From Octopus sinensis (taxonomy: Eukaryota), in NCBI RefSeq assembly GCF_006345805.1, contig NC_043006.1, positions 85,994,001 through 86,058,000 of the forward strand: a stretch of 64,000 nt of DNA, in the 5' to 3' direction. Positions 16,089 to 63,903 of this stretch are shown in pieces. Each line of letters opens with the position of its first letter. Position 1 is the first letter of the stretch. Below the pieces are notes generated by a model that saw nothing but the letters and a program-made list of their open reading frames with translations, searched no databases and was not told the origin of the DNA. The translations under genes were made by a program, and so were the position numbers.

Positions 16089-16111
16089 TTTTTGCTAGTT
16101 TCTAGCAAAAA

Positions 16112-16149
16112 CTGTCCGACGAACGGCAACGGGAAACTCAGAGTAACAG
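16112..16149 (+). ncRNA. Minimal type I hammerhead-ribozyme-like motif (variant core CCGACGA)
   Basis: CUGU-CCGACGA-ACG GCAA CGG-GAAA-CUCAGAG-UA-ACAG: stem I CUGU/ACAG, GNRA-capped stem II, self-complementary stem III ACUC-A-GAGU, GUA triplet. Confidence 0.55.
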
Positions 16150-17319
16150 ATTTTGTTGAATTTTCTGCTGCTTTAAATAAAGCATATTACTCTACCACTG
16201 GTATTTGAGTACTCTTTTTTCCACCTTGTTTCACATTTATGTGTTTACTCCGGTATATATATATATCCAGGTAGTGCCCCAGCGTGACCGCAGTCTAATG
16301 AGTGAAACAAGTAAAAGGTAAACGATATATATACATACACACGCACATTTATATGTGCATACATATACATACACGCCTATATATATAGGTTCAAAATCGT
16401 ACATAAAGAACACAAAAAGCAAAACAGACAGGTGAGGCAACAACAATCAAGGTGTATTAGTTTGACTAATATATATATATATATATATAATTGTGTGCTC
16501 CGAGGCAAGTTGTGACTTGATAATAACTTCTATGGTCTTTATTATATATCTGTTCTACACAAACCGTATAATTTGTATATATGGCCAAATTGTTAATCCC
16601 AAAATCAAACATTTCCGTTGAGTTATAAGTATATCGTCTTTATTTTTGTATTGCACCTTCATTTCAAATCATAGATTTATTTACAAAAGATTATTTTTTT
16701 GTAAATTAATTTGTAATTAAAACGGAAATCAAGAAATAATCAAAAATACGGATGGAAACACCCTTAAACTGCAAGCCAAGGGAAACTGGTGTTCCCCTCG
16801 AAAAGTTTTGTAGACTCACAACATTTGTATTTACTTATATTTGAGTACAATTGAGATTGATGTGAGAGACTTTGCCATAAACCGTTAATCATTTGATCTA
16901 AGTAATCATGTTATTGGAAAGGCATTAACACAATTCCTTACTTTATAAATATTAGATTTCTGCAAGAAATTATTTATGCTCCAGGTCTTTGTTTATTTTT
17001 ATATTATTCTGTTATTATCGGTTGCGAGATGTCCAGTTTTCAAACAATAAACACTTCTACAACAGTAACTACCTGCCTGTAGGTGCTAGAAATAACTGCC
17101 AATCAATCTGCCGATCAGTTTAACTCTTCCACCTGGTCTTTCAATGGCTTTCTCGGACAGTTTGCTATAAATTCATCGTATGTAATTTTATCAATTGGTA
17201 AGTACATCGCACACTAATCACATTACCCGGTATTTCTTTACATTACAAGGTACAAGGTAATCTCAGTGAAAACCAATATATCGCCAACAAATCCAGTGTT
17301 ACTCTCTTATCATCATCTT

Positions 17320-19788: not shown

Positions 19789-22523
19789 TGCTTCTGACAA
19801 CTGGACGCTTCTGACAACTGGACGCTTCTAAGGGACAACCTGCTGAAAGCCACTGACCAGATCTGTGGCTGGTGAAAAGTCCCCTCAAGACCCAAAATAA
19901 CGTGGTGGTGGAACAATATTGTTGACAGGGCTATTAGACAAAAGAAACAGGCTTGGAAGGACTGGAAGAACGGTGGTAGCAGGGAAGTGTATCAGATTGC
20001 CAGAAGGGAAGCTAGGAGGCAGGTGTATTTAGCCAGAGGGGAAGCAGATGAGAAAAAATTTGCCAATGTTCTGCGCCGTGAGGATGAAAGACTTGAGATA
20101 TTTCGTGTTGCAAGACAGTGTGTGAGAGAGAATCGTGACGTGGTAGGAGAGAAATGTGTTCGCAAGGATGACGGTTCACTTGTGCTAAATGAGGATGCAA
20201 AGAGAGAGGTTTGGAGATGCCACTATGAAAGGTTGCTGAATGAGGAAAATGAAAGGGATAAAGAGAGTCTGCCGAATGTTGACCCAACAGAGGGACCAGC
20301 AATCCGAGTTGACAGTTCCTTAGTAGTTAAGGCAACTAGAAGCATGAAAACAGGGAAAGCCCCAGGCCCATCAGGAATTACTGCAGAGATGCTCAAAATA
20401 TCTGGTAGTGTAGGCTATAGCCTAGTCACCCGTATAGTTAACCAGGTGATACACGAAGGAGTCATTCCCAATGACTGGTGTAGCAGCATAATAGTCAACT
20501 GCTACAAAGGTAAAGGTGACGTCCTAGATACAAATAACTACAGGGGTATCAAGCTGCTGGATCAGGTAATGAAGGTTATGGAGAGGGTTATAGCCCAACT
20601 AATTAGAGAGAGAGTTAGCTTAGATGAGATGCAGTTTGGGTTCGTGCCAGGGAAAAGTACTACTGATGCTATATTCCTGGTAAGACAGCTGCAGGAGAAA
20701 TACCTAGCCAAAGATAAGCCCCTGTACCTGGCTTTTGTTGACATGGAGAAAGCCTTTGACAAGGTCCCCCAATCCCTTATCTGGTGGTCAATGAGGAAAC
20801 TAGGGATAGATGAATGGTTAGTGAGAGCTGTGTGAGCCATGTACAGAGACGCTGCTAGTAAGGTGAGGGTTGGCACCGAGTACAGTGAAGAATTCCGGGT
20901 GGAGGTTGGGGTCCACTAAGGCTCAGTCCTCAGTCCCTTCCTATTTATCATAGTCCTCCAGGCAATAACGGAGGAATTCAAGACAGGTTGCTCCTGGGAG
21001 CTCCTCTATGATGATGACCTTGCTCTAATTGCTGAGTCACTATCAGAACTGGAGGAGAAGTTTCAGGTGTGGAAGCAAGGATTAGAATCGAAGGGCCTTA
21101 GAATCAACCTAGCCAAAACCCAAGTCCTAATAAGTAGGAAGGTAGACCAATCACAAACGCCTTCAGGTAGATGGCCCTGCTTGATCTGTAAAAAAGGTGT
21201 AGGTAGAAACTCTATAAGGTGCACCAAGTGTAAGCTATGGACACATAAGAGGTGCAGCAATGTCAAAGGAAGGCTAACTAGGAAAATAGTTTTTGTCTGT
21301 GGCAGATGCTCAGGAGCAATAAACACTGAAAATGTGCAGAGACCAACTTCTACCACGTTCCAGGGAGAAAAACTAGAAGTAGTTGATAGCTTCTGCTACC
21401 TAGGTGACCAAGTCAGTGGGTGTGCTGAAAGTGTAACTGCTAGAGTAAGAATAGCCTGGGCAAAATTCAGAGAGCTCTTACCCCTGCCGGTGACAAAAGG
21501 CCTCTCACTCAGAGTAAAAGGCAGACAGTATGATGCATGTGTACGAACAGCCATGCTACATGGTAGTGAAACATGGGCTGTGACTGCTGAGGATATGCGT
21601 AAGCTCGCAAGAAATGAAGCCAGTATGCTCCGATGGATGTGTAATGTCAGTGTTCATAATCGACAGAGTGTAAGTACCTTGAGAGAAAAGTTGGACCTAA
21701 GAAGCATCAGTTGTGGTATGCAAGAGAGACGTTTGCGCTGGTATGGTCATGTGACGAGAATGGCTGAAGATAGTTGTGTGCAAAAGTGCCACACCCTAGC
21801 GGTTGAGGGAACCTGTGGAAGAGGTAGACCCAGGAAAACCTGGGATGAGGTGGTGAAGCACGACCTTCGAACTTTAGGTCTCACCAAGGAAATGACTAGA
21901 GACCGAGACCTATGGAAGTATGCTGTGCGTGAGAAGACCCTGCAAGACTAGTGAGACCATAACCCGTGGCCTCTATCTGGTATGTAGCCAGTCGACTTAT
22001 ACATACCTTTCCTTCTTGGGACACAAAACTCCACTTGTGAAGACCCGTTGAGGCAAGTGAAAATCAGAATCAAACCAAATCAAATTAGATATCAGAAGGC
22101 AGCACCAAAATCGAAGTTGATCAACATCAATGGAAATTGCAGCTGTGATACCAGTGCCGGTGACAAGTAAGCGAACCATCCGATCGTGGCCATTGCCAGC
22201 TCCGCCCCGACTGGCCTCCGTGCTGGTGGCACGTAAAAAGCACCATCCGTTCGTGGCCGTTGCCAACCTCGCCTGGCCCTGGTGCTGGTGGCACGTAAAA
22301 AGCACCATCCGTCCGTGGCCGCTTGCCAGCTCTGTCTGGCACCTGTGCGGGTGGCACGTAAAAAGCACCCACTACACTCACAGAGTGGTTGGCGTTAGGA
22401 AGGGCATCCAGCTGTAGAAACACTGCCAGATCAGACTGGGCCTGATGCAGCCTTCTGGCTTCACAGACCCCAGTTGAACCGTCCAACCCATGCTAGCATG
22501 GAAAGCGGACGCTAAATGATGAT
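19789..22523 (+). mobile_element. 5'-truncated RTE-clade LINE with PHD finger inside ORF2, inactivated
   Basis: One frame with several in-frame stops: NYRGIKLL, QFGFVPGKSTTDA, FVDMEKAFD, YDDD (YADD mutated), C4HC3 finger 21178-21309, ETW, RGRPRKTW; repeat-containing 3' UTR and (GAT)n tail. Confidence 0.95.
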
Positions 22524-23528: not shown

Positions 23529-23997
23529 TCATATATATATATATACATATACACATGATGATCAATGACACCATTCAGCCAGTTTTGAAACATTGAATTC
23601 TAGCTTTCTGTTTTTTCATGGTATTACTGCTTGCATCTGGCTTTTAGCTGTGACAGCACTTTATAAATATTTCTTTCTTCATTCATTTTTCTTGATAGCA
23701 TTGCTTTAGCTGTTATCTTTTCTTAATCTAAGATGGAATGGTGGTGGGGGTGAAGAGGAAGACAACATGAATTATTTTTACCGTATCTAGTTGCAAACTT
23801 GGTTGTATAGTTAAGCTGCTTGCTTCCCAACCTTGTGGTTTCGGGCTCAGTTCCACTGCATGGCATCTTGGGCAAGTCTTCTACTATAGCTGCAGGCTGA
23901 TCAAAGTTTTGGGAATGGTGCTGGTAGATGGAAACTGAAAGAAGTCTGTTGTATGTGTGTGTGTGTGTGTGTGTATGTATATATATATATATATAGC

Positions 23998-24228
23998 GGA
24001 GTAAATACATAAATGTGAAACAAAGTGGAAAAAAGAGTACTCAAATACCAGTGGTAGAGTAATATGCTTTATTTAAAAGCAGCAGAATTCAACAAAACCT
24101 GTTACTCTGAGTTTCATATTCCCGTTTGTCGGACAGTTTTTGCTAGAAAAAACTGTCCGACGAACGGGAACAGGAAACTCAGATTAACAGGTTTTGTTGA
24201 ATTTTCTGCTGCTTTAAAATAAAGTATA
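23998..24228. mobile_element. Penelope-like terminal remnant, family 1, second more decayed copy
   Basis: Reverse-oriented homologue of 16013-16252; hammerhead-like motifs at 24153-24190 (+, CCGACGA, stem III damaged) and 24099-24136 (-, CCGACAA). Confidence 0.7.
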
Positions 24229-25679
24229 TATATATATATATATATACATGACAGGCTTCTTTCTGTTTCTGTATATTAAAGCTATTTACAAATCTTTGGT
24301 TGGCCCAAGGCTATAGTAGAAGACACTTGCCCAAGGTGCCCTACAGTGAAACTGAACCTGGAACCATGTGGTTTTGAAGCAAACTTCTAATCATACAACC
24401 ACTAAGTTCTGCTAACATGATGGTTGTGTATAAACTTCATTAAAAAACCACTACGAATCTCTCTGCTAATGGATTTTCTATTGAGTCGTTTGCAGAAAAT
24501 ATTTTGTTACGCACATTCATGGTTGTTTAATCAACTCCATTTCTAGAACAATTACAATGTAACTTTATAGTTGGTACATTTTGACTTGTGAATGCATATT
24601 TCTCTGTGTACAATGGTTCCAAATTTTTCTCTTGATAAAATTAGTTCAGATATTACAATTAATATACATATATATATGTATATGTATATATAGCAAAAAG
24701 AAAAGTTTTAAATCTAATATTTCCTTGTGTGTAGAGACAAAACAAAGTGTCTTTTTAAAGCATTGAATTACTGTTAGGAATAACTAAGCTATTGTTAACA
24801 ACTAGTCTAAGGTGGTGTGTACGAGGAATTTCTCATAAGTCACTCTGACAAAAAAATAAGTTGGTGTATGCATCTGCGTGTATATCTCTGTATATGTTTA
24901 TATGTGAGTATGTACGTCTGTGTATATGTGCATATCTGTGTGTATATGTATGTGTGCATATCTCTGTGTGTTTGTGTGCATATCTCTGTATGCATGTGTG
25001 TATGGGTGTATATCTGTATATGTTTATCTATGTGTGTATGTCTGAATGAGTATGTATATCAGTGTCTGTGTTTGTATGTATGTATGTATGTATGTATGTA
25101 TATATATATATATACACACATACATATATGTGTGTGTGTGTGTGTGTATTTGCATGTGTGTTTATGAAAGTATGTCTGTTTGTCTATGGATGGATGTATA
25201 TCTCTGTGGGCATATCTGCTTGTTTATGTATGTGTGTATATCAGTATGTTTATGTATGGGTGTATATCTCTGTATGCATATCTGTTTGTTTCTGTATGTG
25301 TATATATTTGTATGTTTATGCGTATGAATTAAATAGTTGGAATTTTTTGTCGTATTTAAAATTTGTTATGTGGAGTTTTAAGTCTGTGCAACTATCAATA
25401 GACTACTGAATTTGAAAAACAAGTAAAAAAAAAACATAGTATAACAACACTGTAACTAATTAGTTTGGTATATTGTAGTTTTTAAATTATATCCCTGTGC
25501 AACTCGGGCAGAACAAATACTGTACAAGGTATTTTCATTGAAGCATATTTAAATGTTTTTTTTTTCTGATGTCTACATCTTTACATCTTTTAGCAATATA
25601 CATCAGTAACAGATAGATATATGCACACACACACATACACACACATGCGTGTATATATATCTAAAATAAATAACTGGTA

Positions 25680-29511: not shown

Positions 29512-30559
29512 TATATATAGTGTAAGTGACCATGATCATTATACATGCGGTGTAATCTTTTCTATGTCTGGTTATGAGGAAATAATGCCTTGCTTGGAAA
29601 CAAGTGCGAGTTGGCAGTCTAGGAACAACAGGAAGAGCATTTAGTTGTATAAAATGACAGCATGGAAAAGTGAATGTTAAAATGCTTTGTAAACTGAATT
29701 TGAATGCCATAGTAAAAATCACTGCCCCAAAGTGCTGCTCTGTAGATTGAACTTAGAACTGCATGGCTGGGAAGTGAATTTCTGAATTGTACAGCTATGC
29801 CTTTTCACATTTCTCTATTTAAAACATTTATACACCCACTAAAATATTTTTTAATCTGTTAGCATTCAGATAACTTTGTCAAATATAATGCCTTATTTTT
29901 CCTTTGTTTTGAATTAATTATCTATAATCACAAAGCTTTGAGGTTTCAATGTGGGGATTGTTTATTTTTAGAATGACATTGTAGAATGGGTGTGAGAGGT
30001 CAGATTTGACCAGTTTAAACATAAATCATGTAGAATATTTGAGCTGGGCAAGGTTGGTTTAAATGCTAAAGGGTTAAACATGTAAACATGTATATGCACA
30101 ATAATAGCAGCATGGTTAAGAAGTTTGCTTTGCAACCATGTGGTTTCATGTTCAATCCCATTGCACAGCACCTTGGGCAAGTATCTTCTACTATAGCCCC
30201 AGTCTGAGTAGAGCCTTATGAATTTGGTAGACAAAAAAGTGTAAGACGCCCATTGTATACATCATCATCATCATTGTTTTAACATCTACTTTTCCATGCT
30301 TGCATGGGTTGGATGGAATTAATTGAGGCAGATTTTCTTCAGCCAGATGCCTTTCCTAATTACTAACCCTCACCTATTTTCAAATAAGGTAATGTGTCCT
30401 CATGGCCAGACATGCTTTCATGGAAGATTGTAAATGAAGGATACTACCTGCATAATGGTAATGCTCATTTACAGCTATTATGTAATGTCAAAGCAAGAAG
30501 ATAGTAACACACACACACACGTTAAAAAGCACCTAATACATTCTGTAAAGTGGTTGGCT

Positions 30560-31290
30560 TAGGAAGGGCATCCAACCATAGAAATAATACAAAAGATGAC
30601 ATTGGAGTTCAGTGCAGTCCTTCAGTTCACCAGTTCCCTGTCAGACCATCCTACCCATACCAGCATGGAAAGTGGATGCCAAATGATGATGATCATCATC
30701 ATTTGATATCCGCTTTCTATGCTGGCATGGGTTGGATGGTTTGACAGGAGCTGACCAGGCTCCATGTCTGTTTTGGTATGGTTCCCATGGGTGGATGCCC
30801 TTCCTAATGCCAACTACTTTACAGAGTGTACTGGTTGCTCTTACGCACCACCAGCACATGTGCTTTTTATGTGGCAACAGCACCTCTGTGCCTGCAAGAT
30901 TAGGGATGCTCAGCTGGGGAGGGTTCCAAGGGATGAGCTTGTATGCAACGGCAACCATGCTTTTACTTAGCACAGCAAACTGCCAGGAGCCTCAGTCTCT
31001 TGTCATCCCTTCTGTGAGTCCCAATGTCTGTAGATCCTTTTTCACCACTTCGTCCCGCGTCTTCCTGGGTCTATCCCTTCCTCATATTCCCTCTATAATT
31101 AGAGATTGGTTCCTCTTGATGCAACTCTCTTCATTCATATGTATTACACAGCCATACCAGTGCAGTCTTCTCTGCTGCACACTGCATCTGATGCTACGTA
31201 TATCCAGTTTTTCTCTCAAATCGCTTACACTCTGTTGTATATGCACACAGACTACCCATCCTGTGAAGCATACTGGCTCCATTAAAGTAT
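30560..31290 (-). mobile_element. RTE LINE 3' fragments and tails
   Basis: LREKLDIRSIRC..RRLHWYG and RTE tail sequence on the minus strand. Confidence 0.75.
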
Positions 31291-35750: not shown

Positions 35751-38629
35751 AGGGCAAATCGAAGTGAAGTTGATACCCCCGTCAACGATGCTATATCTGA
35801 TACCCCTTATTCTGCTTGTTCCCCAACTCCCGCCCCTCAGACTTCACAGCTCAGCATCGTCTACACCAACTCGTGCTCCTTATTCCCAAAGTTCAGTGAA
35901 CTATTTACACTGGCCATACGTGACCCCTGATGTGATAGCTATCACCGAGACTTGGCTGACTCCAGCAGTAAAGGACTCAGAAATCCACCTGCAGGGCTAC
36001 GTCCTTTTCAAATGTGACAGAGGAAAAAGGCGAGGTGGAGGTGTTGCTGTGTATGTTAAGTCTGAGCACAAACCGTCCAGCGGTATTCTACCCACTAATG
36101 CTCAGCCTACAACAAAATTCGATGCTGTCTATTGCAAGCCTATCTAAGTTTTGCCTGCCCGTGTTGGCTGTCTACAGGCCGCCTCTTGCCGACCCCCAGG
36201 ACGATGCTCATTTACTCAAAGCGATAAGATTCGTTTCAGCTTCGCATGACTGTTTGGTACTAGGAGACTTCAACGCTCCCACAATCGATTGGCCCGCATC
36301 AATTTGTACTACATCTTCCCGGTTCGGCTGGGCCCTTCTTGACGTGGCTGAAGATTGTTTTCTATCGCAACATGTTGAATATCCGACAAGGCATCGGTCT
36401 GGGCAGCAGCCATCTATGCTAGATCTGGTATTCTCCCGCTATCCAAGATCAGTGTCAGACGTATTTGTGTGCGCCCCTCTTGCCAAGAGTGATCATGCGG
36501 TCCTGAAGTTCGTCATGCACACAACTTTTTCTGCGCCCACGACTACTTCGCTGCCACGTAGAGTCTTCTCTGCAATTAATCTTGAAATTCTAACCGAGGC
36601 TTCCGTGCTTCTGGACTGGCGATCCCTGATGACGTTGTCCTCAGTTGACGAACTATGGTCATCCCTCAAAGCATATGTAATCTGTTTGACTGACCAGGCA
36701 GTTCCCGTTGGGCTTCCCAATAGGAAGAAACACAAGCCCTGGGTGACGAAGAGGGTTAAACGAGAACATCGACTCAGAGATATTGCTTGGGCTGAATTCA
36801 AAAATCTGGATTCGACTGCAGCTTTTGAGGTGTACAAAACACAACGAGACCGAGCTGTGAAAATCAAAAAGAAAGAACGCTTCAGTTATGAATACAAAAT
36901 CGCGGCAAATGCCTGTAGCAATCCAAAAACCTTCTTTGCCCATGTCCAGCGGAATTCCTGCTTGAACAACCAGATTGCAACGTTGGTAGACTCAACAGGC
37001 GTATCGATTGAGGACCCTTATCAACAGAGTCAATTATTTGCCGAGGCTTTTTCAACTATTTTCAAACAAGATGATGGTCGTGAACCCCCTCCATTTGATA
37101 GATCGGTACCTCCAATGCTTCGATTGGTCATCACACAGGACGAAGTCAAACTTGTTATTCAAGGCCTCGATGTCAACAAGGGTCACGGCCCTGACGGCAT
37201 ACACCCACGAGTTATCAAAGCGTTGGCTCCGGTCATCTGCGAGCCCTTAACGCGACTATTCAATATGTCATTGGCGACGGGTGTTATATCTGCAGACTGG
37301 AGAACAGCGATAATCTGCCCAATTTTCAAGAAAGGGAGCCGCGAAGACCCGCTTAACTACCGACCAGTTTCCCTTACATCAATAATCAGCAAGATGTTCG
37401 AAACTATCCTTAAGAAAAGTATGATGCTCCACCTCCTAAACACAGCCTCTATCTCTGATTCCCAACACGGCTTCGTGCCGAAGAGATCATGTTTGACCAA
37501 CTTACTAGTAATGGAAGAATTGGTGACGCGCATCCTCGATGATAGTGATGCTGTTGACATCGTTTTACTGGACTTTGCCAAAGCTTTTGACTCGGTAAAC
37601 CACCGCCTATTACTTGTCAAGCTTCAAGCATATAGTTTCCATCCGGATATTGTACGATGGGTTGGTGCCTTCCTCTCAGATCGCTCCTTCCAAGTCCAAG
37701 TTAATGGTTCGCGGTCCGACGTCTCCAGTGCGAGCAGTGGCGTGCCTCAAGGTTCAGTGCTTGGGCCCTTGTTGTTCTTAGTCTTCATAAATGACTTGCC
37801 CGACGACCTCACGCAACACACCCTTCTATTTGCCGACGATATCAAACTGGTCGCTCCTCGCGGTAATATAGAGGATCTTCGTCGATGCCTCCACCAAATT
37901 TGGAAGTGGTCTAACGATTGGGACCTGTGTCTGAACGTGTCAAAGTGCTGTCATCTGCCTGTCGGCTCTACTCCTGCAACTCAACTTGATTTCAAGCCGG
38001 GTCGTCTGCTGCTGGAGAGGACCGATCAGGTAAAGGACCTAGGTATCTTGGTGGATTCCTCCTTTTCGCCTTCGGCCCAGTGTGTCCATGCTGCCAACAA
38101 AGCACGCGGAATTCTGTTCTTGATTCGACGGTCATTCGGAATGCTCACAGCAGCCATATTCCTACCACTCTATGTCACGCTGGTGAGACCCATATTGGAG
38201 TATGGGATTCAAGCCTCTTCTCCTTATCTCCTCAAAGACATACAGCATCTCGAAAGAGTCCAGAAGCTGGCTACCCGCATGGTTCATGGTCTCAAAAATT
38301 TGTCCTACGAAGAAAGGCTGAGGACGCTCAACCTTTATTCTCTTGAAAAACGCCGCCGCCGTAGTGATCTCATTCTCGCCCACAACATCATAAGCGGAAA
38401 GTGTAACCTCTCAAAAGAGCTGTTCTTCACTCCTGCTCCAGAGCGTCGGCTGCGGGGTCATTCCGAAAAGCTCTACCTGCGACGATTTCATCTCAATCGA
38501 AGGAGAGGAGCTTTCTCCGTCCAGGTTGCGGATCCGTGGAACAAGCTGCCAGACGAGATGGTAAAGATGCCGACGACCGCTTTGTTCAAAGCCTCCCTGG
38601 ACCTCAAGTGGCCTGAACTCTTTACATGA
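35748..38629 (+). pseudogene. LINE ORF2 (APE endonuclease plus RT); two frameshifts in APE, RT intact
   Basis: YTNSCSL / IAITETWL / GGGVAVYVK / VYRPP / GDFNAP / SDH; NYRPVSLT, QHGF, LDFAKAFD, GVPQGSVLGP, FADD. Confidence 0.95.
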
Positions 38630-38724
38630 ACACCACCCTGTACTTAACTCCATGTCCCCCTACATGGCCTTGCTATTTGCTTTTGAGCCAAATTAACTAA
38701 CTAACTAACTAACTAACTAACTAG

Positions 38725-40070: not shown

Positions 40071-40464
40071 AAAAGCATTCAGTCCACACTGGTTGGCATT
40101 TGGAAGGGTTTTCAGCTGTAAAAACCATGCCAAAACTGACCTCACCTGTGCTGGTGCCATGTAAAAAGTACTCAGCCCCACTCTATGGTATTAGTTGGTG
40201 TTAGGAAGGGCATCCAACCATAAAACCTATGCTAAAACAGATACCGAAGTCTGGTGCAGTCTTCTGCCTGGCCAGCTCCTATCAAACTGTCCAACTCCTG
40301 CCAGCATGGAAGGCAGACATTAAAAGATGACAATGATGGTGATGCATTTGTTTTCCAAGATTCCTGATGTGAAATTGTGTGTTAAAACAGATATTGTTAT
40401 ACTTGGGGGATAGTCATCTTTTACCAATTAAATACGCACACCATATATTTGATCTTCATTTCAG

Positions 40465-40699
40465 CTTTATTATTATTATTATTTTAGTGTCTTTGTTTAA
40501 GCTCTTTTGTCATACATCCTGTGATCTCTTCAGCAATCCTCTATTCCACATGTCTCCACTTGTTCTGCTTATTCTGTTTCAAGACAAAATTGAATAAGCA
40601 GAACAGAAGGAGGCGTGTGATAGAGAGTTGCTGATGAGGTCGCAGTATGTGTGATGAAAGAACGTAGACAATGATACTAAAATAATAATAATAATAAAG
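40465..40699 (+). other. 235-nt intronic hairpin upstream of CCDC61 start exon
   Basis: Hand pairing: 108 positions = 89 Watson-Crick, 11 G:U, 8 mismatches, plus one 2-nt bulge and a 17-nt loop (40575-40591). Confidence 0.85.
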
Positions 40700-40782
40700 T
40701 ATTTAATAATCTTTTCATCTTGTTTTATTTTTGAAGGTAGAACTCTGATAGTGGAAAGTAATTTCCAAATTACCTCCCCAAA

Positions 40783-40942
40783 ATGATGTCCAGTGAACAG
40801 AGCATCTGTTCACACTTCCATTTACGCGGCATTGAGTATGTAATTTCAATGATGTATGGAGAAGGAACGGGCAATAATTTCACCATTGAGGTCCTCAACA
40901 ATGGGACTTTGGATGTGTGGTGTGGTACATTTGATGTAGAAT
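40783..40942 (+). CDS. CCDC61: CCDC61 first coding exon (exon 40737-40942 including 46 nt 5' UTR)
   Basis: Acceptor ttttgaag|40737, in-frame upstream stops, AAAATG start, donor T|GTAAGT; HFHLRGIEYVIS...FTIEV...WCGTFD matches my recollection of the CCDC61 N-terminus (YVFRGVEH...LEVED...WRGEFD). Confidence 0.9.
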
Positions 40943-42210: not shown

Positions 42211-42390
42211 TGACAATTTCAAAGACTTTGAAACTTATTTACTTTAACCTTTAACACACAGCATTTTATCTAGAATTGGTTCCCCTGGCACTGCCCTGTT
42301 ACTACAGGGGATAAAACTCATACGATGATATGATGCACCTACAGTGTGCTAACGGTTAAAGTAAATAAGTTTCAGTCTTTGAAATTGTCA
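42211..42390. mobile_element. Small foldback/MITE with about 50-bp inverted arms
   Basis: TGACAATTTCAAAGACT(TT)GAAACTTATTTACTTTAACC on both ends, inverted; inner TTAA|CC...GG|TTAA. Confidence 0.7.
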
Positions 42391-42622: not shown

Positions 42623-43871
42623 CATAGGTTGGACAAAATAATGGAAACACCTTAAAATTTCAAACAAATTTATTTTAATATGGGGTAGGATCACCTTTGG
42701 CAGTAATTACAGCTTGAATTCTTTGAGGTATGGACTCGTACAAAGCTTGAATTGTTTCCAAAGGAATTTTTGTCCATTCTTCAGCTAAAACAGTCTCCAG
42801 TTCTTGTAGTGATGATGGTTGAGGATATCGACTCCTTACCTGTTTTCCTAAAATGCACCATAAATGTTCAATAATATTGAGATCTGGGTATTGTGGTGGC
42901 CAGATAAGATGTTCACCTTCACTAGAATGTTTCTCGTGCCATTCAATAACAACTTTAGCTGTGTGAATTGGTGCATTATCATCCTGAAAGATTGCGTTTC
43001 CCTCCAGAAGCAGTTCTGCATCCATAGGATGAATTTGATCAGATAAAATGCTTAAATAGTCTTGACTATTAATTCTGCCATAAAGGGAAACCATTGGGCC
43101 GGTGGATTTCCAAGAAATAGCCCCCCCCCCAATCATCACAGATCCTCCTCCGTGTTTAACAGTTGGAAGAAGGCAGTCTGGGTCAAATGCTTCTTTTGGC
43201 TGTCTCTACACATGGTGGTCAGAAATAATGTAAAGGATGACTCATCTGAGAAAATAACATTCTTTCACTGCTCTAGGGACCAATTCTGTAGGTTTTTACT
43301 CCACTCTAAATGCTTTGCAACATTTGTTTTTGAAAGTAGTAGTTTTTTAATTGCAGCCCAACCATGAAATCCGGCTTTGTGCAACTCCCAGCGAACTGGG
43401 TTCTCGAGGTGGTCATTAAGCTCTGCAGTAATTTTGGGAGCTGTACTTGTGTGATCCTTTCTAACAATTTGTGTAAGAGTTCGACAGTCCCTATCTGAAA
43501 GTTTTGGTTTTCTTCTGGAGTTTTGTTTCAATGAGGAGGTTTTTCCCTCTTTATCAAAGGCTGTCATTACTTTCAAGACAGTACTTCTTGATATACCAAA
43601 CATTTCAGCTGTTTTCGTTACGCTAGCACCTGCCATATGAGCATCAACAATATGACCTCTTTGAAAGTCTGATAGATCTGTAATTTTAATGAATTTTAAT
43701 TACCTTTTTCTGATGATATCTGAAAAGAAACAGCAATTTTAACAAAACATATTTAGCGACACTAATAATAAATAAAAAAACAAAAATAAACAAGCTTTTG
43801 ACGGTTTTATAGATATTTCAAAATTATGATGCTATGATGCTAGGTGTTTCCATTATTTTGTCCAACCCCTG
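42623..43871 (-). mobile_element. Tc1-family DNA transposon with DD36E transposase, inactivated
   Basis: 26-bp perfect TIR core GGTTGGACAAAATAATGGAAACACCT (42627-42652; 43842-43867); HTH, FSDESSF, FQDDNAPIH and PDLNIIE with 36 residues between D and E; a stop and a frameshift. Confidence 0.92.
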
Positions 43872-45396: not shown

Positions 45397-45479
45397 ATAT
45401 TGAAAACCTCACCCATAAAACAGGAAACTTTAAACAATTTTCTATATTTTCTAACATGTTGAAAACAGCTTTACTTAAG
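45397..45479 (+). CDS. CCDC61: CCDC61 coding exon 2
   Basis: ttacttctag|AT...AAG|GTGAGT; (Y)IENLTHKTGNFKQFSIFSNMLKTALLK, the CCDC61 signature; phase 1 to 0 matches neighbours. Confidence 0.97.
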
Positions 45480-49523: not shown

Positions 49524-49681
49524 CAAAGTGAAAGTGTGACCCTTGATTTACTAACATATGCTGATCTGGAGCAGCTCCGGCTACAGCGCTCTGGTAACCG
49601 AACAAATGCTGAGAAACAGACTCCTGCAAACCTTAATACCAAGCGCTATTTAATACTAACTTACACTGTTGAATTTGATCG
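49524..49681 (+). CDS. CCDC61: CCDC61 coding exon 3
   Basis: ttcttgccctag|CAA...GATCG|gtcagt; QSESVTLDLLTYADLEQLR...LNTKRYLILTYTVEFD(R); phase 0 to 2. Confidence 0.97.
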
Positions 49682-50585
49682 GTCAGTACAGCTTAAAGTT
49701 TTCTCTTCTAGGTGTTAGTGGTTTATGTCATTCACTTAATGCTACACTAATGATTTGTTTTAGAAGGTGTCACATTGGTGTGTGTGCTGGTGTCACATAA
49801 AAAGCACTAGTGCTGGTACCATGTAAAAAGCGCTGGTACTAGTTCCACATAAAAAGCACTGATGATGGGTGCCTTGTAAAAACCACGCAGTGCACTCGGT
49901 GGAGTGGTTGGCATTAGGAAGGGCACCTAGCTGTAAAAACCAAGCCAAAAACCTGGTGCAGCCCCTGGTCTTGTCAGTTCCTGTCAAGCTGTTCAACCCA
50001 TGCCAGCATAGAAAATGGATGTTAAATGATGATGATGAGTCTCACAGGTACCCTTCGGCCTTTTTTTTATCTAAGGTGTTTTTTAATTCAATATTGTCAC
50101 CATCATCACCATTTTAATGTTCACTTTTCTATGCTTGCATAGGTTGGATGTATTTCATTGAGGTTTAGTTCCACTGTGTACCACCTTGGGAAAATGTATT
50201 TTACAACAGCCTATGGCTGACTAAAATTTGTGAGTGGATTTGCTTAATGGAATCCGAAAGAAGCTCATTGTATACATACTTATGTGTGTGTATTTATCCT
50301 TGTCCTGACATTACATGATAGTTATAAACAAGCATCGCTTACATATTTTAGTGGTGTCGTTCATTTTCAATCTTTTGTGAAAATATACCTAGCCATGAGA
50401 AAATATAAGTTTGTTTGGAAATAGGTGAGAGTTGGTGGCAGGAAGAACATCTGGTTGTAGAAAATCTGACTCAACAAATTCTCTCTGCTCTGTACGAGTA
50501 TGGAAAAACAAAAAATAATGATGATAATGGTATATATCTATATTCAACTGATTTGTACATTTTTAATCATATGTAAATAAAAATA

Positions 50586-51130: not shown

Positions 51131-51738
51131 CTCTGTCACCCTAATGAAATTTCTTACACACACACACTCAGTATGAAAGATATACGTATACAGAGAAAGA
51201 ATGGGAGGGAATGTGGTTAAATATATATACAATGCGAAAAATGTAAAAGACAGAGAGAGAGAGATAAAGAGAGGGAATCTTTTCTGTTGCTGTCATAGAT
51301 TTTGAAATTTTAGAATTAAATGAAAATTTTCAAATTGGCTATCTTGATGTAATTTTTCCATGCTGAATCTGATTTCGTGATCCATTCATTCCAGAAAAAT
51401 TTTAGAAAAAAGTCACAGATATTTAAAGTTTGATAATTTTTTTTCCTGGTCAGAAAACAGCATTTTCTGTGATAGCTGTCTATCACAAAATGAAAGCAAA
51501 AATAATACCATGATAAAGTTCTAAATAAGATAAAAGAAATTACATGTCATGTCAAGAGAGAGAGAGAGAGAGAGAGTGAGAGTGGGAGCAGAGATATATA
51601 TACAGAGAAGAATGCGAGTATAGTAAGTATATATAGGAGGGAGGAAAAGCAGAAGAGACAGATTGGAGAGATAGAGAGAAATAGATACTGTGATCTAAAA
51701 TTAACAATGGATGTTAAATGATGATGAGGATACATACA

Positions 51739-51773
<35 letters not shown>

Positions 51774-53976
51774 CATCATCATCATCATCATATATATATA
51801 ATTACCTTTTAACATCAATTTTTAATGCTGGTTTGTGTTGGGCATATATTCAGCTAATTTATACATATGTGGACGTGTAAAAATTTTAAAACTTTAAGTA
51901 AGCAGTAGTATGATGTATGGACAAATACAGATTGTGTGAGCAAGAAAACTGTAACTGAAATTCAGATGTTCATATTCTGTTGCAAGCATTTATTTCATTG
52001 GCTGTTTCTGGGCAGAAGGTTAATATTCTTTTGTACAGAACATAAGAATCTTTAATTTTCTCAACTAAAATAGACATATCTAATTTTATATTTTAAAAGT
52101 TGTGTTTACAAACAATGTTTTCTTGTTAAGAAGCCTAATTCGGTCTGCTCAAATAACTAATTAAACATTTATGGCTGACCTCCAGAAATACCACTTATGC
52201 TTCTGGTTTTTGGAACACTGCATATTTTGTCACTCCATGTTTGACCTAGTAGAGTGCAGTCAAATAATTAGGGTGTGTTGCATCAAACTTACTGTTTGTT
52301 CTGAAAGGGGTTAAGCTAATGACTACAATGCATGTTTTATAAATTCCTTAATTATTAATAATGGTGGAAGGGTGGTGGATAGTAGCATTTATTAGAGCAT
52401 TGGAAAAATTGCCTTGCAATATCTAGTTCCATGTAAGGTGGGGAGCTGGCAGAATTGTTAGCATGCTGGGTAAAATGCTTAGCAGCATTTTGTCTAGCTT
52501 TATGTTCTGAGTTCAAATGCTGTTGAGGTCGACTTTGTCTTTCGTCCTTTCAAGGTTGATAGAATAAGTATCAGCTGAGGGCTGGGATCAATGTAATTGA
52601 CTTACCCTTTCACCTGAAAGGGTAAGTGCCAAAATTTAACATCGATATTTATTTCCTTGTAGCACTTTACATCCTGAGTTCAAATTCCATCAAAGTCAAC
52701 TTTGCCTTTCATCCTCCCCATGGAATTGATAAAATAAGTATGAGTCATGTACTGGGGTTGACATAATTAACTATTGCTGAACCCCAGATTTCAGGTCTTT
52801 TGGGTAATTTTTTTTAATCTGTTAGTCAGGAGGGAAAGCAGTGCCCATGACTTATACTGGGCCTCTGAGATTGAGGGAATGAAGGTGTTTGCAGAATGGA
52901 AACCTTGTCCAAATGCTTGCAACAGAGTTGGATACCTCTACTGAAGGTACTCAGGGGTAATGGGTTAAATCTACCATCCAAAATATTGAAGAAACAATTA
53001 TTAATAATTCTTTCTAATTTTGGCACAAGTCCAGGACTTTTTTGAGGGGAAGGGAAGTTGATTATATTGATCCCAGAGTGCAACAGCTACTTATTTTATT
53101 GACTCCAAAAGGATGAACAGCAAAGCTGACCTTGGTGGTATTTAAACTGGGAACATAAAGAGTTAGAAGAAATGCTTCTATGCACTTAGCTGAGTTAGAC
53201 TCAGTGTATAACGATATTTAGTTTTCTCCCTTTCAGTTTCAAGTTCAAACCCTGCTTAACCCTCTAGCATTCAGATTACTTACTCAAATATTATGCTTTC
53301 TTATTCACATTGTTTTCTTATTCACATTGATTTGAGTCAGAAAAGTACTAACTTTATTAGCAAATAATTCATCTTGAACATTTAAATAATTATTCATACT
53401 TGATGATAATCGATAGTGTATAATTGTATTTTTTTTTTATTGTATTGCATTTTATTTTTGTTATATACATCATCATCACCATTTAATGTCCATGTTCTAT
53501 GCTGGCATAAACTGGGCAGTTTGACAGGATCTGATGGGGCAAAGGATTGTATTGTGTTCCCTTGTCTACTTTGGCATGGTTTCTATGGCTGGATGTCCTT
53601 TATAACGTCAACCACTTTCCAGCAACTTGTGAAACTACAAATCCTGAGAGAGACAGCTTTATGCTTGGAGATGAGGGATTAAAGTGAGAGAGAAAGGTGT
53701 CAGAGAAGAACAGGTTTCATGTTGTAGAGGGACTACATGGTCATTTACATTTTTTGGAAGAGATGGTAGGGGATGATCAGGTTGGAGTGGGAAAAAAGAT
53801 GAAATAGTAGTTATGAGGTATCAGAGTGGACCATCTGGGTACAAGGTGTGTAGGAGTATATAGGGGCAGAAGAATTGGGAGTGTGAGTAGATAGAGGTTG
53901 CAAGAGTGTATGGAAAAGTGAGAGATGGAAGGGGGTGAATGTAATGAATAAACAAATGTTGAATGGATGATATATT

Positions 53977-54066: not shown

Positions 54067-54172
54067 AATACATTATCCACTTCCTTTACATCAAAAACTG
54101 ACGGCTAACAACACTTCTCTACAACAGATCATTGTTAATCTAAGATCTGAAGTAGAACAACTTAAAGATGAG
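54067..54172 (+). CDS. CCDC61: CCDC61 coding exon 4
   Basis: ctgtttcag|A...GAG|gtattt; (R)IHYPLPLHQK...LQQIIVNLRSEVEQLKDE, start of the coiled coil; phase 2 to 0. Confidence 0.95.
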
Positions 54173-54619: not shown

Positions 54620-55321
54620 TCTTTGTCTATCTCTTTCCCCCTCTTGTTCTTCATCCTTTCTGGTTTTCTCTCCCACCCTTCCCTATTCTTCTCTCCTCTT
54701 CACCATTCCCTCTCTCTCTCTCCTCCTCCTCAACTCTCTCGTCACTGACACGTGACGAACGAGAATCTATCTTTCTACCCACAACCTTCATAAAGACTAA
54801 ACATGCTTACACTGTCTCTTTCATAAGCTTGTCTTCCTAAGCGTTCAGAATAATTTTTCCATCGTCTTGGCTTAACAGCCCTCACCGTTTGTTTTTACTG
54901 TTTTGTTCTCATTGTTCTGTCTTTTACTGTTTTTACTTTTTTATTGTTTTTACTGTTTTGTTCTCACTGTCCTGTTCTTGTTACCACTTTCACCCTCTGC
55001 AAAATATCCCAAATATTTTATTTAATTTGCTTTGCGGGAAGGACTGTTTCAATGAAGTTGTGTCTTGTCCTTGCCTTCGAAATGTGGAGTAGTTGAAACA
55101 GGGACAACTGAAGAATGGTAACATTCTTTATGTTGTATGTCTCATTTCTCTGTTTGTTGTTTTTCGTTTCTATGTTTTTGTTTTTATGTTTTCGTTTCTG
55201 TTGTGTTCAATGTTTTTTTGATGTCCTGTACCCATATATGCATGTATATATACATATATATGTAGGTATGTACAAACATGTATGTATATATGCATATATT
55301 TATATATTATTTATATTATTT

Positions 55322-55352
<31 letters not shown>

Positions 55353-55570
55353 TGTATGTGTGTGTGCATGTGTGTATACATATATATATATATCTTAAGC
55401 TTGACTACATCCTTTGCACCATAAAAATGAATTGTTGTATGTATGTATGTACGTATATATGTGTGCATCTATTTATACACACACGCACACGCGCGCACAC
55501 ACACACACACACACAAGTAAGCTCATAGGTGCAAAACAAGGTGAAAAAATAGTATTCAAATATATATATA

Positions 55571-56690
55571 TCACTTGATCACTTTGACCAACCAGTCCGT
55601 CGCGTCCATTTGACACCGCTGGTCACAGCACGCTGTCCACTCCTCTCTGGATCGCGCCTCTCTCATCCACGTGATCCCAATCGTCCTCCTAAAATCATAA
55701 CTCCGCCGTCGTGGAGGTCTTCCGGGTGGTCTTTTCCGCTCACGCGGGTACCACTCGATAACTGCGCGTGTCCACTGATTATTGGTGAGCCGGGCGACGT
55801 GTCCAGCCCATTTATACTTGCTGCGTGTATACTCTGCGATGACATCTCTCACGCCGGACTTCTTTCTGATGATCTTGCTACTTATGTACTCTCTCAACGA
55901 GATACCAATCACTGACCTTTCCATGGCTCTTTGAGCCGTTACCAGTCTTTGCTCTTCTCTCTTTGTGGTAGCCCATGTTTCACTACCATATAACATTGCA
56001 GGCAGAACTGCACTGTTAATGAGGTTGGCGCGGGTGGTCCTGTCCAACCTTCCCTTGAGCACATCCCTTATGCCATTGAATGCCTTCCATCCGGCCCTTA
56101 CTCTCCGTGAGATCTCCTTTTTGATATCCTGGCACATATTTACTTCCTGTCCCAGGTAGACATATTCTCTCACCTCCTCTATTTCATCACTGCCGATCAC
56201 CATTCGACCTGTTGGTACATTGTCTGACCGCATGAACTTTGTTTTCATGTGGTTCATCTTGAGACCTACTGCAGAACTTTTGATGTCGAGCTCCGTCAGC
56301 ATGGTTTAAAGCTGATCCATGTTTTCAGCGATGAGTACGATGTCGTCAGCGAAACGGAGGTGAGTGAGGAGCTCGCCATTGATGTTGACACCACCTTGCC
56401 ATTCGATGCCTCTCATGATCTGTTCGAGACATGCAGTGAAAAGTTTTGGGGAGATTGTATCTCCTTGCTTCACTCCCTTCTCGACCGGCACTCGTATGGG
56501 TGATGACAGTAGAGCTATGTCGGTGGTGCATCCGGAATTTGCCTCTCTGAGCAGCTGCACATATTGCGCTTCGATTCCTTGCCTCTGCAGCGAGTTCAGC
56601 ACTGCGTTGGTTTCGACGCTATCGAAGGCCTTCTCATAATCTATAAACGCAACGCAAAGAGGCAGCTTGTACTCATTTGCTTGCTCAAGC
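55571..56690 (-). mobile_element. 5'-truncated classical RTE LINE (no PHD), single premature stop
   Basis: FIDYEKAFD, GVKQGDTISPKLF, LRFADD, YVYLG, YGSETW, KWAGHVAR, RPPGRP; TAA at 56306-56308; (CAAGTGAT) tail; (TA)n on both sides. Confidence 0.93.
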
Positions 56691-57480: not shown

Positions 57481-57896
57481 TTTTTTATTTGATGCCGGTA
57501 CCACCCAACTGGCCCACGTGCCGGTGGCATTTAAAAGCACCCACTACACTCTCGGAGTGGTTGGCGTTAGGAAGGGCATCCAGCTGTAGAAACTCTGCCA
57601 GATCAGATTGGAGTCTAGTGCAGCCTTCTGGTTTGCCAGCCCTCAGTCAAATCGTCCAACCCATGCTAGCATGGAAAGCGGACGTTAAATGATGATGATG
57701 ATATATATATATATATGTATATATGTAAATGTGTATATATATATTTGTATGGATGAATGGATTATCCTATGTTTACTGTTAACATGGAAAATTCAATAAA
57801 CTGTTACCAGGGTAGCAAAATTCACGTCAGAAACACAGTTGAAATGACCTATCCAAAGGTAGAAACTCCGGGTTAATGTGCAGTAATTTGTGTGTT

Positions 57897-58102
57897 ATAA
57901 ATGAATAAATAAATAAATGGAGTTGAACAAAGATGTTAATAAAATTCTTTTACTTTCGACATATGTTTTTTTCCTCACGAGAAGATTGCATTTTACACCG
58001 TTTATTCCTTTGGAATAAAACCATGTTATCTTCGAAACATATGTCGAAAGTAAAAGAATTTTATTAACATCTTCATTCAACTCCATTTATTTATTCATTT
58101 AT
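57897..58102. mobile_element. Penelope-like terminal remnant, family 3
   Basis: About 70-bp inverted arms 57897-57968 and 58035-58102 around a hammerhead motif; (TA)n on the right. Confidence 0.7.
57969..58050 (+). ncRNA. Type I hammerhead motif with G5C core substitution, probably inactive
   Basis: UUUUC-CUCACGA-GAAGAU[...]AUCUUC-GAAA-CAUAUG-UC-GAAAG; 6-bp stem II, palindromic stem III ACAUAUGU, GUC triplet. Confidence 0.65.
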
Positions 58103-58106
58103 ATAT

Positions 58107-58171
<65 letters not shown>

Positions 58172-58218
58172 GTTTATATGTATACATGTATATATGTAAA
58201 TGTATATATATATATATC

Positions 58219-58478
58219 ACGTGACCGACCAGACCATCAGATGTTGTTACACATCGAATGATGCCACCCCGCTGGCTAAGCGAGCAGGCCAACAGAAGAA
58301 AGAGTGGGAGAAAGAGTGGTGAAAGAGTACAGCAGGGATCACTACCCCCTGCCTGAGCCTCGTGGAGCTTTTAGGTGTTTTCGCTCAATAAACACTCACA
58401 ACGCCCGGTCTGAGAATCGAAACCGCGATCCTATGACCACGAGTCCGCTGCCCTAACCACTGGGCCATTGCGCCTCCA
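58219..58478 (-). mobile_element. tRNA-derived SINE family C, tail type 3
   Basis: Same head and body as 3717 and 11091; different 3' part. Confidence 0.85.
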
Positions 58479-58479
58479 C

Positions 58480-59000
<521 letters not shown>

Positions 59001-59411
59001 AGGCATCCATACAGTTTCTGTATACCAGCCTCACTCACACGGCATTGGCTGGCCAAAAGCTACAGCAAACACACATGCCTAAGTTGCCATGCAGTGCCAT
59101 AGAACTTGTGATTATATGATTGCAAAGTCTGTCACATATCCACAGAATCATACTTGCACCTCATCAGATTGCTAGATTTAATAATTAACTTTTTCATCTG
59201 ACGCTCTTGTAATCTAGACACTTGGCCATTACAATGTCTCACCTGTTATATACTTCATAACATGATAGCCTAACCATATTTATTTCTTAGAAAATGGTTT
59301 CCTATATTTATTTCCTTCAATGACTCAATTCCAAAACTGATTTTAATCATTTCATCATTGAAGCTAGATATTTTCCTTTATATTGATTCTGTTTTAATGT
59401 TCACCTTTCAG

Positions 59412-63836: not shown

Positions 63837-63862
63837 GATGAATATATATATATATATGATAA

Positions 63863-63903
<41 letters not shown>

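What the first reader, a model, noticed from the sequence alone, without database searches (positions are those of the whole stretch)
40465..40699. 235-nt G:U-biased hairpin ending 37 nt upstream of the CCDC61 start-codon exon
Seen: 108 paired positions, with 89 WC, 11 G:U and 8 mismatches (only 3 of them A-C), one 2-nt bulge, a perfect apical 14-bp stem and a 17-nt loop. No other copy is in the window. A neutrally decaying DNA palindrome should give G:U and A-C about equally; 11 versus 3 has a one-sided binomial p of about 0.03, favouring the + (CCDC61 sense) strand. It abuts a candidate branch point (TTAAT 40703-40707). Inference: a structured intronic RNA such as an ADAR substrate, pri-miRNA/hpRNA or splicing regulator; cephalopods are known for extensive A-to-I editing and novel miRNAs.
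Basis: partly seen in the sequence, partly recalled or inferred. Interest (0 to 1): 0.7.

Follow-up and report, generated by a model that had tools for sequence, protein, structure and literature searches.

The report
Decayed palindromic insertion before CCDC61 exon
The 235-base hairpin is real, but it looks like an ordinary, ageing palindromic mobile-element-type insertion, one of several in this repeat-rich window, and its excess of G:U pairs is not clearly above the local background.

Summary
Window 40465-40699 is a 235-nt palindrome with 89 Watson-Crick pairs, 11 G:U, 8 mismatches, a 2-nt bulge and a 17-nt loop. It folds at -133 kcal/mol on the + strand (z = -20) and -104 on the - strand. 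It ends 37 nt before a candidate acceptor of the first coding exon of a CCDC61 homologue. No second copy is in the window.

The functional reading is weakly supported. The 11:3 G:U excess is nominal (p = 0.029 one-sided, 0.057 two-sided). In-window controls put the neutral G:U-type fraction at 0.50-0.60, which gives p = 0.03-0.12.

Tight palindromes are common here: at least seven others of 105-527 nt in 64 kb. Per-arm divergence (0.10) lies within the range of SINE copies (0.03-0.25).

An 18-nt imperfect direct repeat (14/18, empirical p about 0.008) abuts both ends of the hairpin, and the outer ends are (TTA)n and (AAT)n. This points to insertion as a unit with a target-site duplication, which also explains the adjacent branch-point motif.

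If transcribed, the hairpin would be a default long dsRNA and a plausible ADAR substrate. It does not look like a canonical pri-miRNA or mirtron. An hpRNA role is unlikely in a mollusc.

Copy number, orthology, editing and small RNAs could not be tested: the available collections gave no match to this organism's probes.

The parts
40465..40574 (+). 5' arm of the palindrome (pyrimidine-rich); starts with C + (TTA)5.7 at 40467-40483
40575..40591 (+). 17-nt apical loop TGTTTCAAGACAAAATT
40592..40699 (+). 3' arm of the palindrome (purine-rich); ends in an (AAT)n tail (40670-40697) + AAG
40446..40463 (+). Left copy of the flanking direct repeat (target-site-duplication-like): TATTTGATCTTCATTTCA, ending 1 nt before the palindrome
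   Evidence: local alignment 14/18, shuffle p = 0.015; anchored scan of the whole window, p = 0.008.
40700..40717 (+). Right copy of the flanking direct repeat: TATTTAATAATCTTTTCA, starting immediately after the palindrome. It contains the candidate branch-point motif TTAAT (40703-40707).
40718..40736 (+). Pyrimidine-rich tract and candidate 3' splice site (…TTTTATTTTTGAAG|G). The acceptor is inferred from sequence only.
   Evidence: no RNA data
40737..40942 (+). First coding exon of the CCDC61 homologue. ATG at 40783, GTAAGT donor after 40942, phase 1. Further exons lie at about 45397-45479, 49524-49682 and about 54068-54170.
   Evidence: The concatenated 169 aa hit CCDC61 proteins, E = 1e-39 to Lymnaea stagnalis, 50% identity.
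40134..40348 (+). Old copy of SINE family A (K2P 0.25 to the in-window consensus), 116 nt upstream of the hairpin. Context only, not part of the hairpin.

Best explanation
The hairpin is a single palindromic piece of DNA that was inserted as a unit just upstream of the branch point, polypyrimidine tract and acceptor of the first coding exon of CCDC61. Since then it has decayed at about the neutral rate.

Shown:
- It is a near full-length palindrome with microsatellite outer ends, (TTA)n on the left and (AAT)n on the right.
- It is flanked on both sides by an 18-nt imperfect direct repeat.
- The two arms differ by K2P 0.21, or about 0.10 per arm.
- It sits in a repeat-dense stretch where tight palindromes are frequent.

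Inferred:
- The direct repeat is a target-site duplication. The duplication regenerated the segment from branch point to AG downstream of the insert, which would explain why an insertion so close to an acceptor was tolerated.
- The length of the duplication and the simple-repeat end fit retroposition by a LINE enzyme better than a cut-and-paste MITE. One possibility is a head-to-head inverted dimer of a retroposon 3' end made by snap-back synthesis. This mechanistic sub-claim is the weakest part.
- If the site is transcribed within the CCDC61 pre-mRNA, the RNA folds into about 108 bp of dsRNA and is probably edited promiscuously by ADAR, as other repeat-derived duplexes are. That would be a by-product, not a selected function.
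- The G:U excess on the sense strand is sampling noise on top of a mild local excess of C-to-T over G-to-A on the + strand.
For: - Palindrome and fold.
- Flanking repeat 40446-40463 / 40700-40717: 14/18 matches, abutting both ends. Shuffle p = 0.015; anchored empirical scan of all window positions p = 0.008.
- Simple-repeat outer ends. The CR1-like LINE 1.7 kb upstream also ends in a simple-repeat tail, (AACT)7, so such tails are a local retroposon feature.
- The window is repeat-dense: LINE EN+RT ORFs, a DDE_3 transposase remnant, and 12 and 13 copies of two SINE families.
- Other tight palindromes: 16013-16187 and its copy 24062-24229, 57889-58115, 42211-42390, 30525-30842 (an inverted SINE dimer), 4094-4620 and 55288-55571.
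- Per-arm divergence is 0.10, against 0.03-0.25 for SINE copies.
- G:U-type to A:C-type background on the + strand: 153:120 in eight control inverted TE pairs; 50:50 summed by me from the nine other intervals listed; 50:33 in SINE copies inside the gene. Per-site C>T is 0.104 against G>A 0.049 in the gene, giving an expected G:U fraction of 0.50-0.60. The resulting P is 0.03-0.12 and Fisher's test gives 0.08 / 0.16.
- The perfect runs of 14 and 24 bp are expected by chance (P = 0.76 and 0.15).
- Palindromic ~220-bp Harbinger repeats in Xenopus self-fold and are the most edited family there (PMC5625713).
Against: - No second copy was found, so membership of a repeat family is not shown. Only 64 kb of this genome was available.
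- The 18-nt flanking repeat is imperfect, AT-rich and only moderately significant.
- An 18-bp duplication fits no classical MITE superfamily, and the snap-back inverted-dimer origin is conjecture.
- The 11:3 bias is the strongest G:U-direction bias among the palindromes examined. The other palindromes in the same gene show none (18:21, my sum). A real sense-strand constraint is therefore not excluded.
- Whether the site is intronic, and so transcribed in sense, is itself inferred.
Confidence: 0.7

Rival explanations
1. A selected, sense-strand structured RNA in the CCDC61 pre-mRNA. It could recruit ADAR or act as a splicing regulator that loops out 235 nt next to the branch point. Pairing would be maintained at the RNA level, so G:U is tolerated and A:C is purged.
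For: - 11 G:U against 3 A:C on the + strand. The + strand fold is 29 kcal/mol more stable than the - strand fold.
- Other palindromes in the same gene show no such bias (18:21, my sum).
- The hairpin sits 4 nt from a branch-point-like motif and 37 nt from the candidate acceptor.
Against: - The bias has p = 0.03-0.12 against in-window backgrounds, and Fisher's test gives 0.08 / 0.16. The strand and the palindrome were chosen after the fact, among roughly ten candidates.
- Five transversion and three A:C mismatches plus a bulge persist.
- Arm divergence equals that of neutral SINE copies.
- The proximity to the branch point is explained by the flanking duplication.
- No conservation data are available.
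Confidence: 0.08
2. A small-RNA precursor: either a pri-miRNA (apical ~70 nt, 40548-40618) or a long hpRNA that Dicer processes into endo-siRNAs.
For: - A long, stable hairpin with a perfect 14-bp apical stem and a 17-nt loop.
- Weak covariance-model similarity to several miRNA precursor families (25-30 bits).
Against: - All Rfam hits are far below gathering scores (70-108 bits), and most also match the - strand, so they reflect generic hairpin similarity.
- From established knowledge of Microprocessor substrates: the stem of about 108 bp lacks the ssRNA basal junction about 35 bp from the loop that Drosha/DGCR8 measures.
- The hairpin ends do not coincide with a splice site, so it is not a mirtron.
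- Molluscs, O. bimaculoides included, show no siRNA-class Ago or Dicer and almost no Dicer-pair reads (PMC12479628).
- The candidate mature sequences are not found in the paper library.
Confidence: 0.04
3. A local, non-mobile inverted duplication. This could arise by replication template switching or fold-back repair of a break in the intron. It would be neutral and unrelated to any transposable-element family.
For: - It is single-copy in the window.
- The whole length is palindromic rather than only the termini.
- No terminal motif or TSD of a known DNA-transposon superfamily is present.
Against: - Fold-back duplication does not create a direct repeat on both sides of the palindrome, yet one is seen (p about 0.008).
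- Neither arm resembles the adjacent unique sequence.
- The outer ends carry simple-repeat tails like those of retroposons in this window.
Confidence: 0.15

Closest known systems
Self-folding palindromic MITEs, such as the ~220-bp Harbinger-derived repeats of Xenopus tropicalis described in PMC5625713
   Same: Size (221 nt there, 235 nt here). The palindrome runs the full length and folds on itself with a short loop. No inverted neighbour is needed. The location is non-coding and transcribed. The expected outcome is promiscuous ADAR hyper-editing.
   Different: No 3-bp TWA duplication directly flanks the ends; the flanking repeat is about 18 nt. No second copy and no family consensus are available. 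Editing is untested.
Inverted pairs of SINEs in introns, such as inverted Alu pairs in primates. The tail-to-tail SINE-A dimer at 30525-30842 in this window is a local example.
   Same: Repeat-derived long intronic dsRNA. The arms decay neutrally. It is an ADAR substrate by default.
   Different: Here the two arms abut through a 17-nt loop and match no SINE or LINE family seen in the window. The simple-repeat ends face outwards (head-to-head). A single flanking duplication encloses both arms, which implies one insertion event rather than two.
Drosophila hpRNA loci (endo-siRNA hairpins)
   Same: A long, nearly perfect hairpin of hundreds of nucleotides transcribed by Pol II.
   Different: hpRNAs need a Dicer-2/AGO2-type pathway, and that pathway was not detected in molluscs (PMC12479628). 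No small-RNA data or target gene is known here.
Canonical animal pri-miRNA and mirtron
   Same: An intronic hairpin with an apical loop of at least 10 nt.
   Different: The stem is three times too long, there is no basal junction, and no family match reaches threshold. The ends are not splice sites.

Membership tests
Canonical animal pri-miRNA | Stem of about 33-35 bp between a single-stranded basal junction and the apical loop | tested here: not met
   Continuous stem of about 108 paired positions with no basal junction at about 35 bp
Canonical animal pri-miRNA | Match to a described miRNA family at or above its curated threshold | tested here: not met
   Best Rfam hit 29.8 bits against a gathering score of 76; most hits occur on both strands
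Canonical animal pri-miRNA | Discrete 5p/3p reads with 2-nt 3' overhangs | not testable with these tools
   No small-RNA data available
Mirtron | Hairpin ends coincide with the splice sites | tested here: not met
   The 3' end of the hairpin is 37 nt upstream of the candidate acceptor
hpRNA / endo-siRNA locus | Long inverted-repeat hairpin transcript | tested here: met
   235-nt hairpin, -133 kcal/mol. Transcription is inferred only.
hpRNA / endo-siRNA locus | Host has a dedicated siRNA Dicer/Ago pathway and makes endo-siRNAs | tested here: inconclusive
   Literature only: not detected in 32 molluscs, including O. bimaculoides (PMC12479628). The taxon of the window was not verified.
MITE (non-autonomous DNA transposon) | Terminal inverted repeats | tested here: met
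   Trivially met, because the whole element is a palindrome
MITE (non-autonomous DNA transposon) | Short target-site duplication of superfamily-specific length (TA, TWA, TTAA, 8 bp, 9-11 bp) directly at both ends | tested here: not met
   The flanks are …TTTCAG| and |TATTTAA…. No such short duplication is present; an 18-nt 14/18 repeat is seen instead.
MITE (non-autonomous DNA transposon) | Many dispersed, similar copies | tested here: inconclusive
   None in the 64-kb window. Control scans with a 23-mer that occurs 6 times in the window find nothing in the metagenome, viral or prokaryote-genome collections, so the nulls for the hairpin carry no information.
Non-LTR retroposed insert (target-primed reverse transcription) | Variable-length target-site duplication of about 7-20 bp enclosing the insert | tested here: met
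   18 nt, 14/18 identical, abutting both ends. p = 0.015 by shuffles and 0.008 by empirical scan. Suggestive, not decisive.
Non-LTR retroposed insert (target-primed reverse transcription) | 3' end is an A-rich or simple-repeat tail | tested here: met
   (AAT)n at 40670-40697. A local CR1-like LINE ends in (AACT)7. The mirror-image (TTA)n at the 5' end needs an extra inverted-dimer step, which is conjectural.
Repeat-derived ADAR hyper-editing substrate | Long, nearly perfect intramolecular dsRNA with a short loop | tested here: met
   100 of 108 positions paired and a 17-nt loop
Repeat-derived ADAR hyper-editing substrate | Clusters of A-to-G mismatches between RNA and DNA | not testable with these tools
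   No RNA-seq available

The most novel reading that the evidence does not exclude
The hairpin is a lineage-specific exapted insert. Its sense-strand RNA duplex, kept paired through G:U-tolerant evolution, acts next to the branch point of the first coding exon of CCDC61. It could act as an ADAR-binding or editing-dependent switch, or as a looping element that controls use of the acceptor.
Probability: 0.06. Interest if true: 0.5.

Novelty: new member of a known kind. Interest (0 to 1): 0.13.

Why it matters
As it stands, little. It is one more repeat-type palindrome in a repeat-rich intronic or upstream region.

Two points have modest value. First, the G:U versus A:C test for RNA-level selection needs a local, strand-aware neutral baseline. 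Here C-to-T exceeds G-to-A about two-fold on the sense strand inside the gene, and that alone moves the expectation to about 0.6. Second, the case shows how an insertion 37 nt from an acceptor can be tolerated: the target-site duplication rebuilds the branch point and polypyrimidine tract downstream of the insert.

If RNA data showed heavy editing or an effect on splicing, the locus would be a compact model of a single-insert dsRNA next to a splice site.

Tried and rejected
- **Orthologous loci.** The 53-aa exon-1 peptide shared no words with any of 5.8 billion proteins. The 169-aa four-exon CCDC61 query found nothing above 51% identity. No close relative of this organism could therefore be reached, and the orthologous site could not be examined.
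- **Exact-protein look-ups.** Look-ups of the ORF through the hairpin and of the exon-1 read-through ORF found nothing.
- **Taxon.** The 871-aa LINE ORF found only relatives of 51% identity or less, in birds, flatworms and a gastropod. The cephalopod origin stays unverified. My recollection that SINE family B resembles an abundant octopus SINE is a lead only.
- **Other copies via spurious ORFs.** phmmer of the 72-aa hairpin ORF against 1.84 billion representatives gave two satellite-repeat ORFs. They match mostly the non-hairpin part of the query and are spurious.
- **DNA pattern scans for the hairpin apex.** There were 0 hits in the metagenome, prokaryote-genome and viral collections. A SINE 23-mer used as positive control also gave 0 hits, so these nulls are uninformative.
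- **Sequence strings in the paper library.** Only an unrelated rat primer matched.
- **Other checks.** No tRNA-like element was found. The perfect apical 14-bp and terminal 24-bp runs were tested as possible signs of constraint, and both are expected by chance.
- **Classical MITE assignment.** I considered it and set it aside because no short superfamily-type duplication flanks the ends.

Full report
**1. Observation**

The sequence at 40465-40699 is a 235-nt palindrome. The inverted-repeat finder reports its arms.

RNAfold gives one uninterrupted hairpin on the + strand at -133.1 kcal/mol. Two hundred dinucleotide shuffles average -45.9 ± 4.3, so z = -20.4. The - strand folds at -104.1 kcal/mol, z = -14.3.

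I aligned the 5' arm to the reverse complement of the 3' arm. Adding the apical C40574:G40592 pair read, the counts are:
- 89 Watson-Crick pairs
- 11 G:U-type and 3 A:C-type transition mismatches
- 5 transversion mismatches
- one 2-nt bulge
- a perfect 14-bp apical stem and a 17-nt loop

Relaxed blastn of the hairpin against the window finds only itself and (ATT)n microsatellites near 10,000.

The exon 37 nt downstream does begin a CCDC61 homologue. Four exon-like blocks on the + strand lie at 40783-40942, about 45397-45479, 49524-49682 and about 54068-54170. They concatenate to 169 aa that hit CCDC61 proteins; the named best hit is Lymnaea stagnalis, E = 1e-39, 50% identity. That the hairpin is intronic is inferred only from a pyrimidine tract and an AG at 40735-40736. 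No RNA evidence is available.

**2. Is the G:U excess meaningful?**

The value for 11 against 3 is p = 0.029 one-sided and 0.057 two-sided under a 50:50 expectation. I built three neutral baselines from the window itself.

- **SINE substitutions.** I took substitutions in 25 copies of two SINE families relative to their in-window consensus and mapped them to the + strand. G:U-generating changes (C>T, A>G) against A:C-generating changes (G>A, T>C) are 176:150 overall and 50:33 for copies inside the gene. Per site, C>T is 0.104 against G>A 0.049 inside the gene. A palindrome of this composition would then have an expected G:U fraction of 0.60. The figure is 0.50 upstream and 0.53 overall.
- **Control inverted TE pairs.** Eight pairs, most of them kilobases apart, give 153 G:U-type, 120 A:C-type and 146 transversions on the + strand.
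- **Other tight palindromes.** The nine other intervals sum to 50:50. The four inside the gene sum to 18:21. Both are my sums of that output.

With p0 between 0.50 and 0.60, P(>=11 of 14) is 0.029-0.124. Fisher's test against the control pairs gives 0.08 one-sided and 0.16 two-sided.

The hairpin shows the strongest bias in the G:U direction among the palindromes examined. With n = 14, about ten palindromes and two strands to choose from, this is not evidence of selection. An interval at 51699-51803 shows 1:8 in the opposite direction. The perfect runs of 14 and 24 bp are expected by chance (P = 0.76 and 0.15).

**3. What the surroundings say**

The window is dense in mobile elements:
- a CR1-like LINE with an intact 871-aa endonuclease and reverse-transcriptase ORF at 36014-38629, ending in an (AACT)7 tail
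- other reverse-transcriptase fragments
- a DDE_3 transposase remnant at 42675-43139
- 12 and 13 copies of two SINE families, one at 40134-40348, just upstream of the hairpin

Tight self-complementary palindromes are frequent:
- 16013-16187 (175 nt, -141.6 kcal/mol) and a second copy at 24062-24229
- 57889-58115 (227 nt)
- 42211-42390 (180 nt)
- 30525-30842 (318 nt, a tail-to-tail SINE dimer)
- 4094-4620 and 55288-55571

The hairpin is therefore not an unusual object in this genome. Its arm-to-arm K2P distance is 0.207, or about 0.10 per arm. That lies in the middle of the 0.03-0.25 range of SINE copies, so its decay is compatible with neutrality.

**4. Evidence for insertion as a unit**

Immediately left of the palindrome lies TATTTGATCTTCATTTCA (40446-40463, 1 nt from the first paired base). 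Immediately right lies TATTTAATAATCTTTTCA (40700-40717). They match at 14 of 18 positions, about the same identity as the two arms.

Shuffled flanks reach this score in 1.5% of trials. I also applied an anchored version of the test to every position of the window, microsatellites included. It reaches 14/18 in 0.8% of positions.

I read this as a decayed target-site duplication. Joining the flanks gives an empty site in which the branch-point-like TTGAT/TTAAT motif lies 30 nt from the AG, exactly as it does today. The duplication would thus have rebuilt the acceptor region downstream of the insert. This explains both why the insertion was tolerated and why the hairpin "abuts" a branch-point motif.

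An 18-nt duplication and a simple-repeat end ((AAT)n) fit LINE-mediated retroposition better than any cut-and-paste superfamily, whose duplications are 2-11 bp (established knowledge). The mirror-image (TTA)n at the other end requires that the inserted molecule was already an inverted dimer, for instance through snap-back synthesis. That step is conjecture.

**5. Function**

If the site is transcribed in the pre-mRNA, about 108 bp of nearly perfect dsRNA with a short loop is the standard substrate of promiscuous ADAR editing. Hyper-editing across Metazoa falls mostly on repeat-derived dsRNA. Octopus CNS shows more than a million hyper-editing sites. In Xenopus, ~220-bp palindromic Harbinger repeats that fold on themselves are the most edited family (PMC5625713). 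This is a default consequence, not a sign of selected function.

The other proposed roles fare worse:
- **pri-miRNA.** This is unlikely. The stem is three times the canonical length with no basal junction. Rfam gives only sub-threshold hits, mostly on both strands.
- **Mirtron.** This is excluded by the 37-nt distance from the acceptor.
- **hpRNA.** This is unlikely if the organism is a mollusc. A survey of 32 molluscs including O. bimaculoides found no siRNA-class Ago or Dicer and almost no Dicer-pair reads (PMC12479628).

**6. Limits**

No collection available here gave any match to this organism's probes.
- The exon-1 peptide, CCDC61 and the LINE ORF have no close relatives.
- A SINE 23-mer present six times in the window has no match in the metagenome, viral or prokaryote-genome collections.
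- The null scans for the hairpin are therefore uninformative, as are the spurious results of the ORF-based search.

Copy number in the genome, the orthologous site, editing and small RNAs all remain untested. The cephalopod attribution is also unverified: the best named CCDC61 hit is a gastropod at 50% identity.

**7. Verdict**

The structure is real and its description accurate. The most likely identity is an unclassified palindromic insert of mobile-element type, decaying neutrally, that would form a dsRNA if transcribed. The case for a selected structured RNA rests on a borderline count and is not supported by the controls. Interest is low.

Noticed in passing
window 16013-16187 and 24062-24229 (within the larger repeat 15996-16266 / 23983-24246): Two copies of a ~170-nt, almost perfect palindrome (84 WC against 3 mismatches; -141.6 and -111.7 kcal/mol). 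Each is bounded by TA-rich sequence and the two lie in inverted orientation. They look like a young Stowaway/mariner-type MITE family.
   Followed up: partly
window 30525-30842: A 318-nt hairpin (-189 kcal/mol) formed by two SINE family A copies joined tail-to-tail. It shows that inverted SINE dimers occur in this genome.
   Followed up: partly
window 57889-58115 and 42211-42390: Two more tight palindromes (227 nt, -103.9 kcal/mol; 180 nt, -75.8 kcal/mol) inside CCDC61 introns. The second lies about 300 nt from a DDE_3 (mariner-like) transposase remnant at 42675-43636 on the - strand. Neither shows a G:U bias (3:4 and 2:2).
   Followed up: partly
window 36014-38724: A CR1-like LINE with an uninterrupted 871-aa endonuclease and reverse-transcriptase ORF and an (AACT)7 3' tail. 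It may be recently active. The closest database relatives are only 51% identical or less.
   Followed up: partly
window 20293-21959 and 62161-63836: Two copies of another LINE, 90% identical over 1.7 kb and in opposite orientation. The copy at 62166-63953 keeps a 595-aa reverse-transcriptase ORF on the - strand.
   Followed up: no
SINE copies at >40.7 kb (CCDC61 gene body): On the sense strand, C>T substitutions occur at about twice the per-site rate of G>A (0.104 against 0.049; 34 against 18 events). The asymmetry is weaker upstream of the gene (0.151 against 0.108). This is compatible with a transcription-associated mutational asymmetry, but the counts are small.
   Followed up: partly
window 40462-40464: A better-consensus acceptor-like motif (CATTTCAG|C) lies immediately before the hairpin, inside the left copy of the flanking repeat. 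If it were used, the whole hairpin would lie in the 5' UTR, 84 nt before the ATG. Which acceptor is used is unknown.
   Followed up: no
window 58100-59050: About 1 kb of TA/TATG-type microsatellite that dominates any inverted-repeat scan of the window.
   Followed up: no
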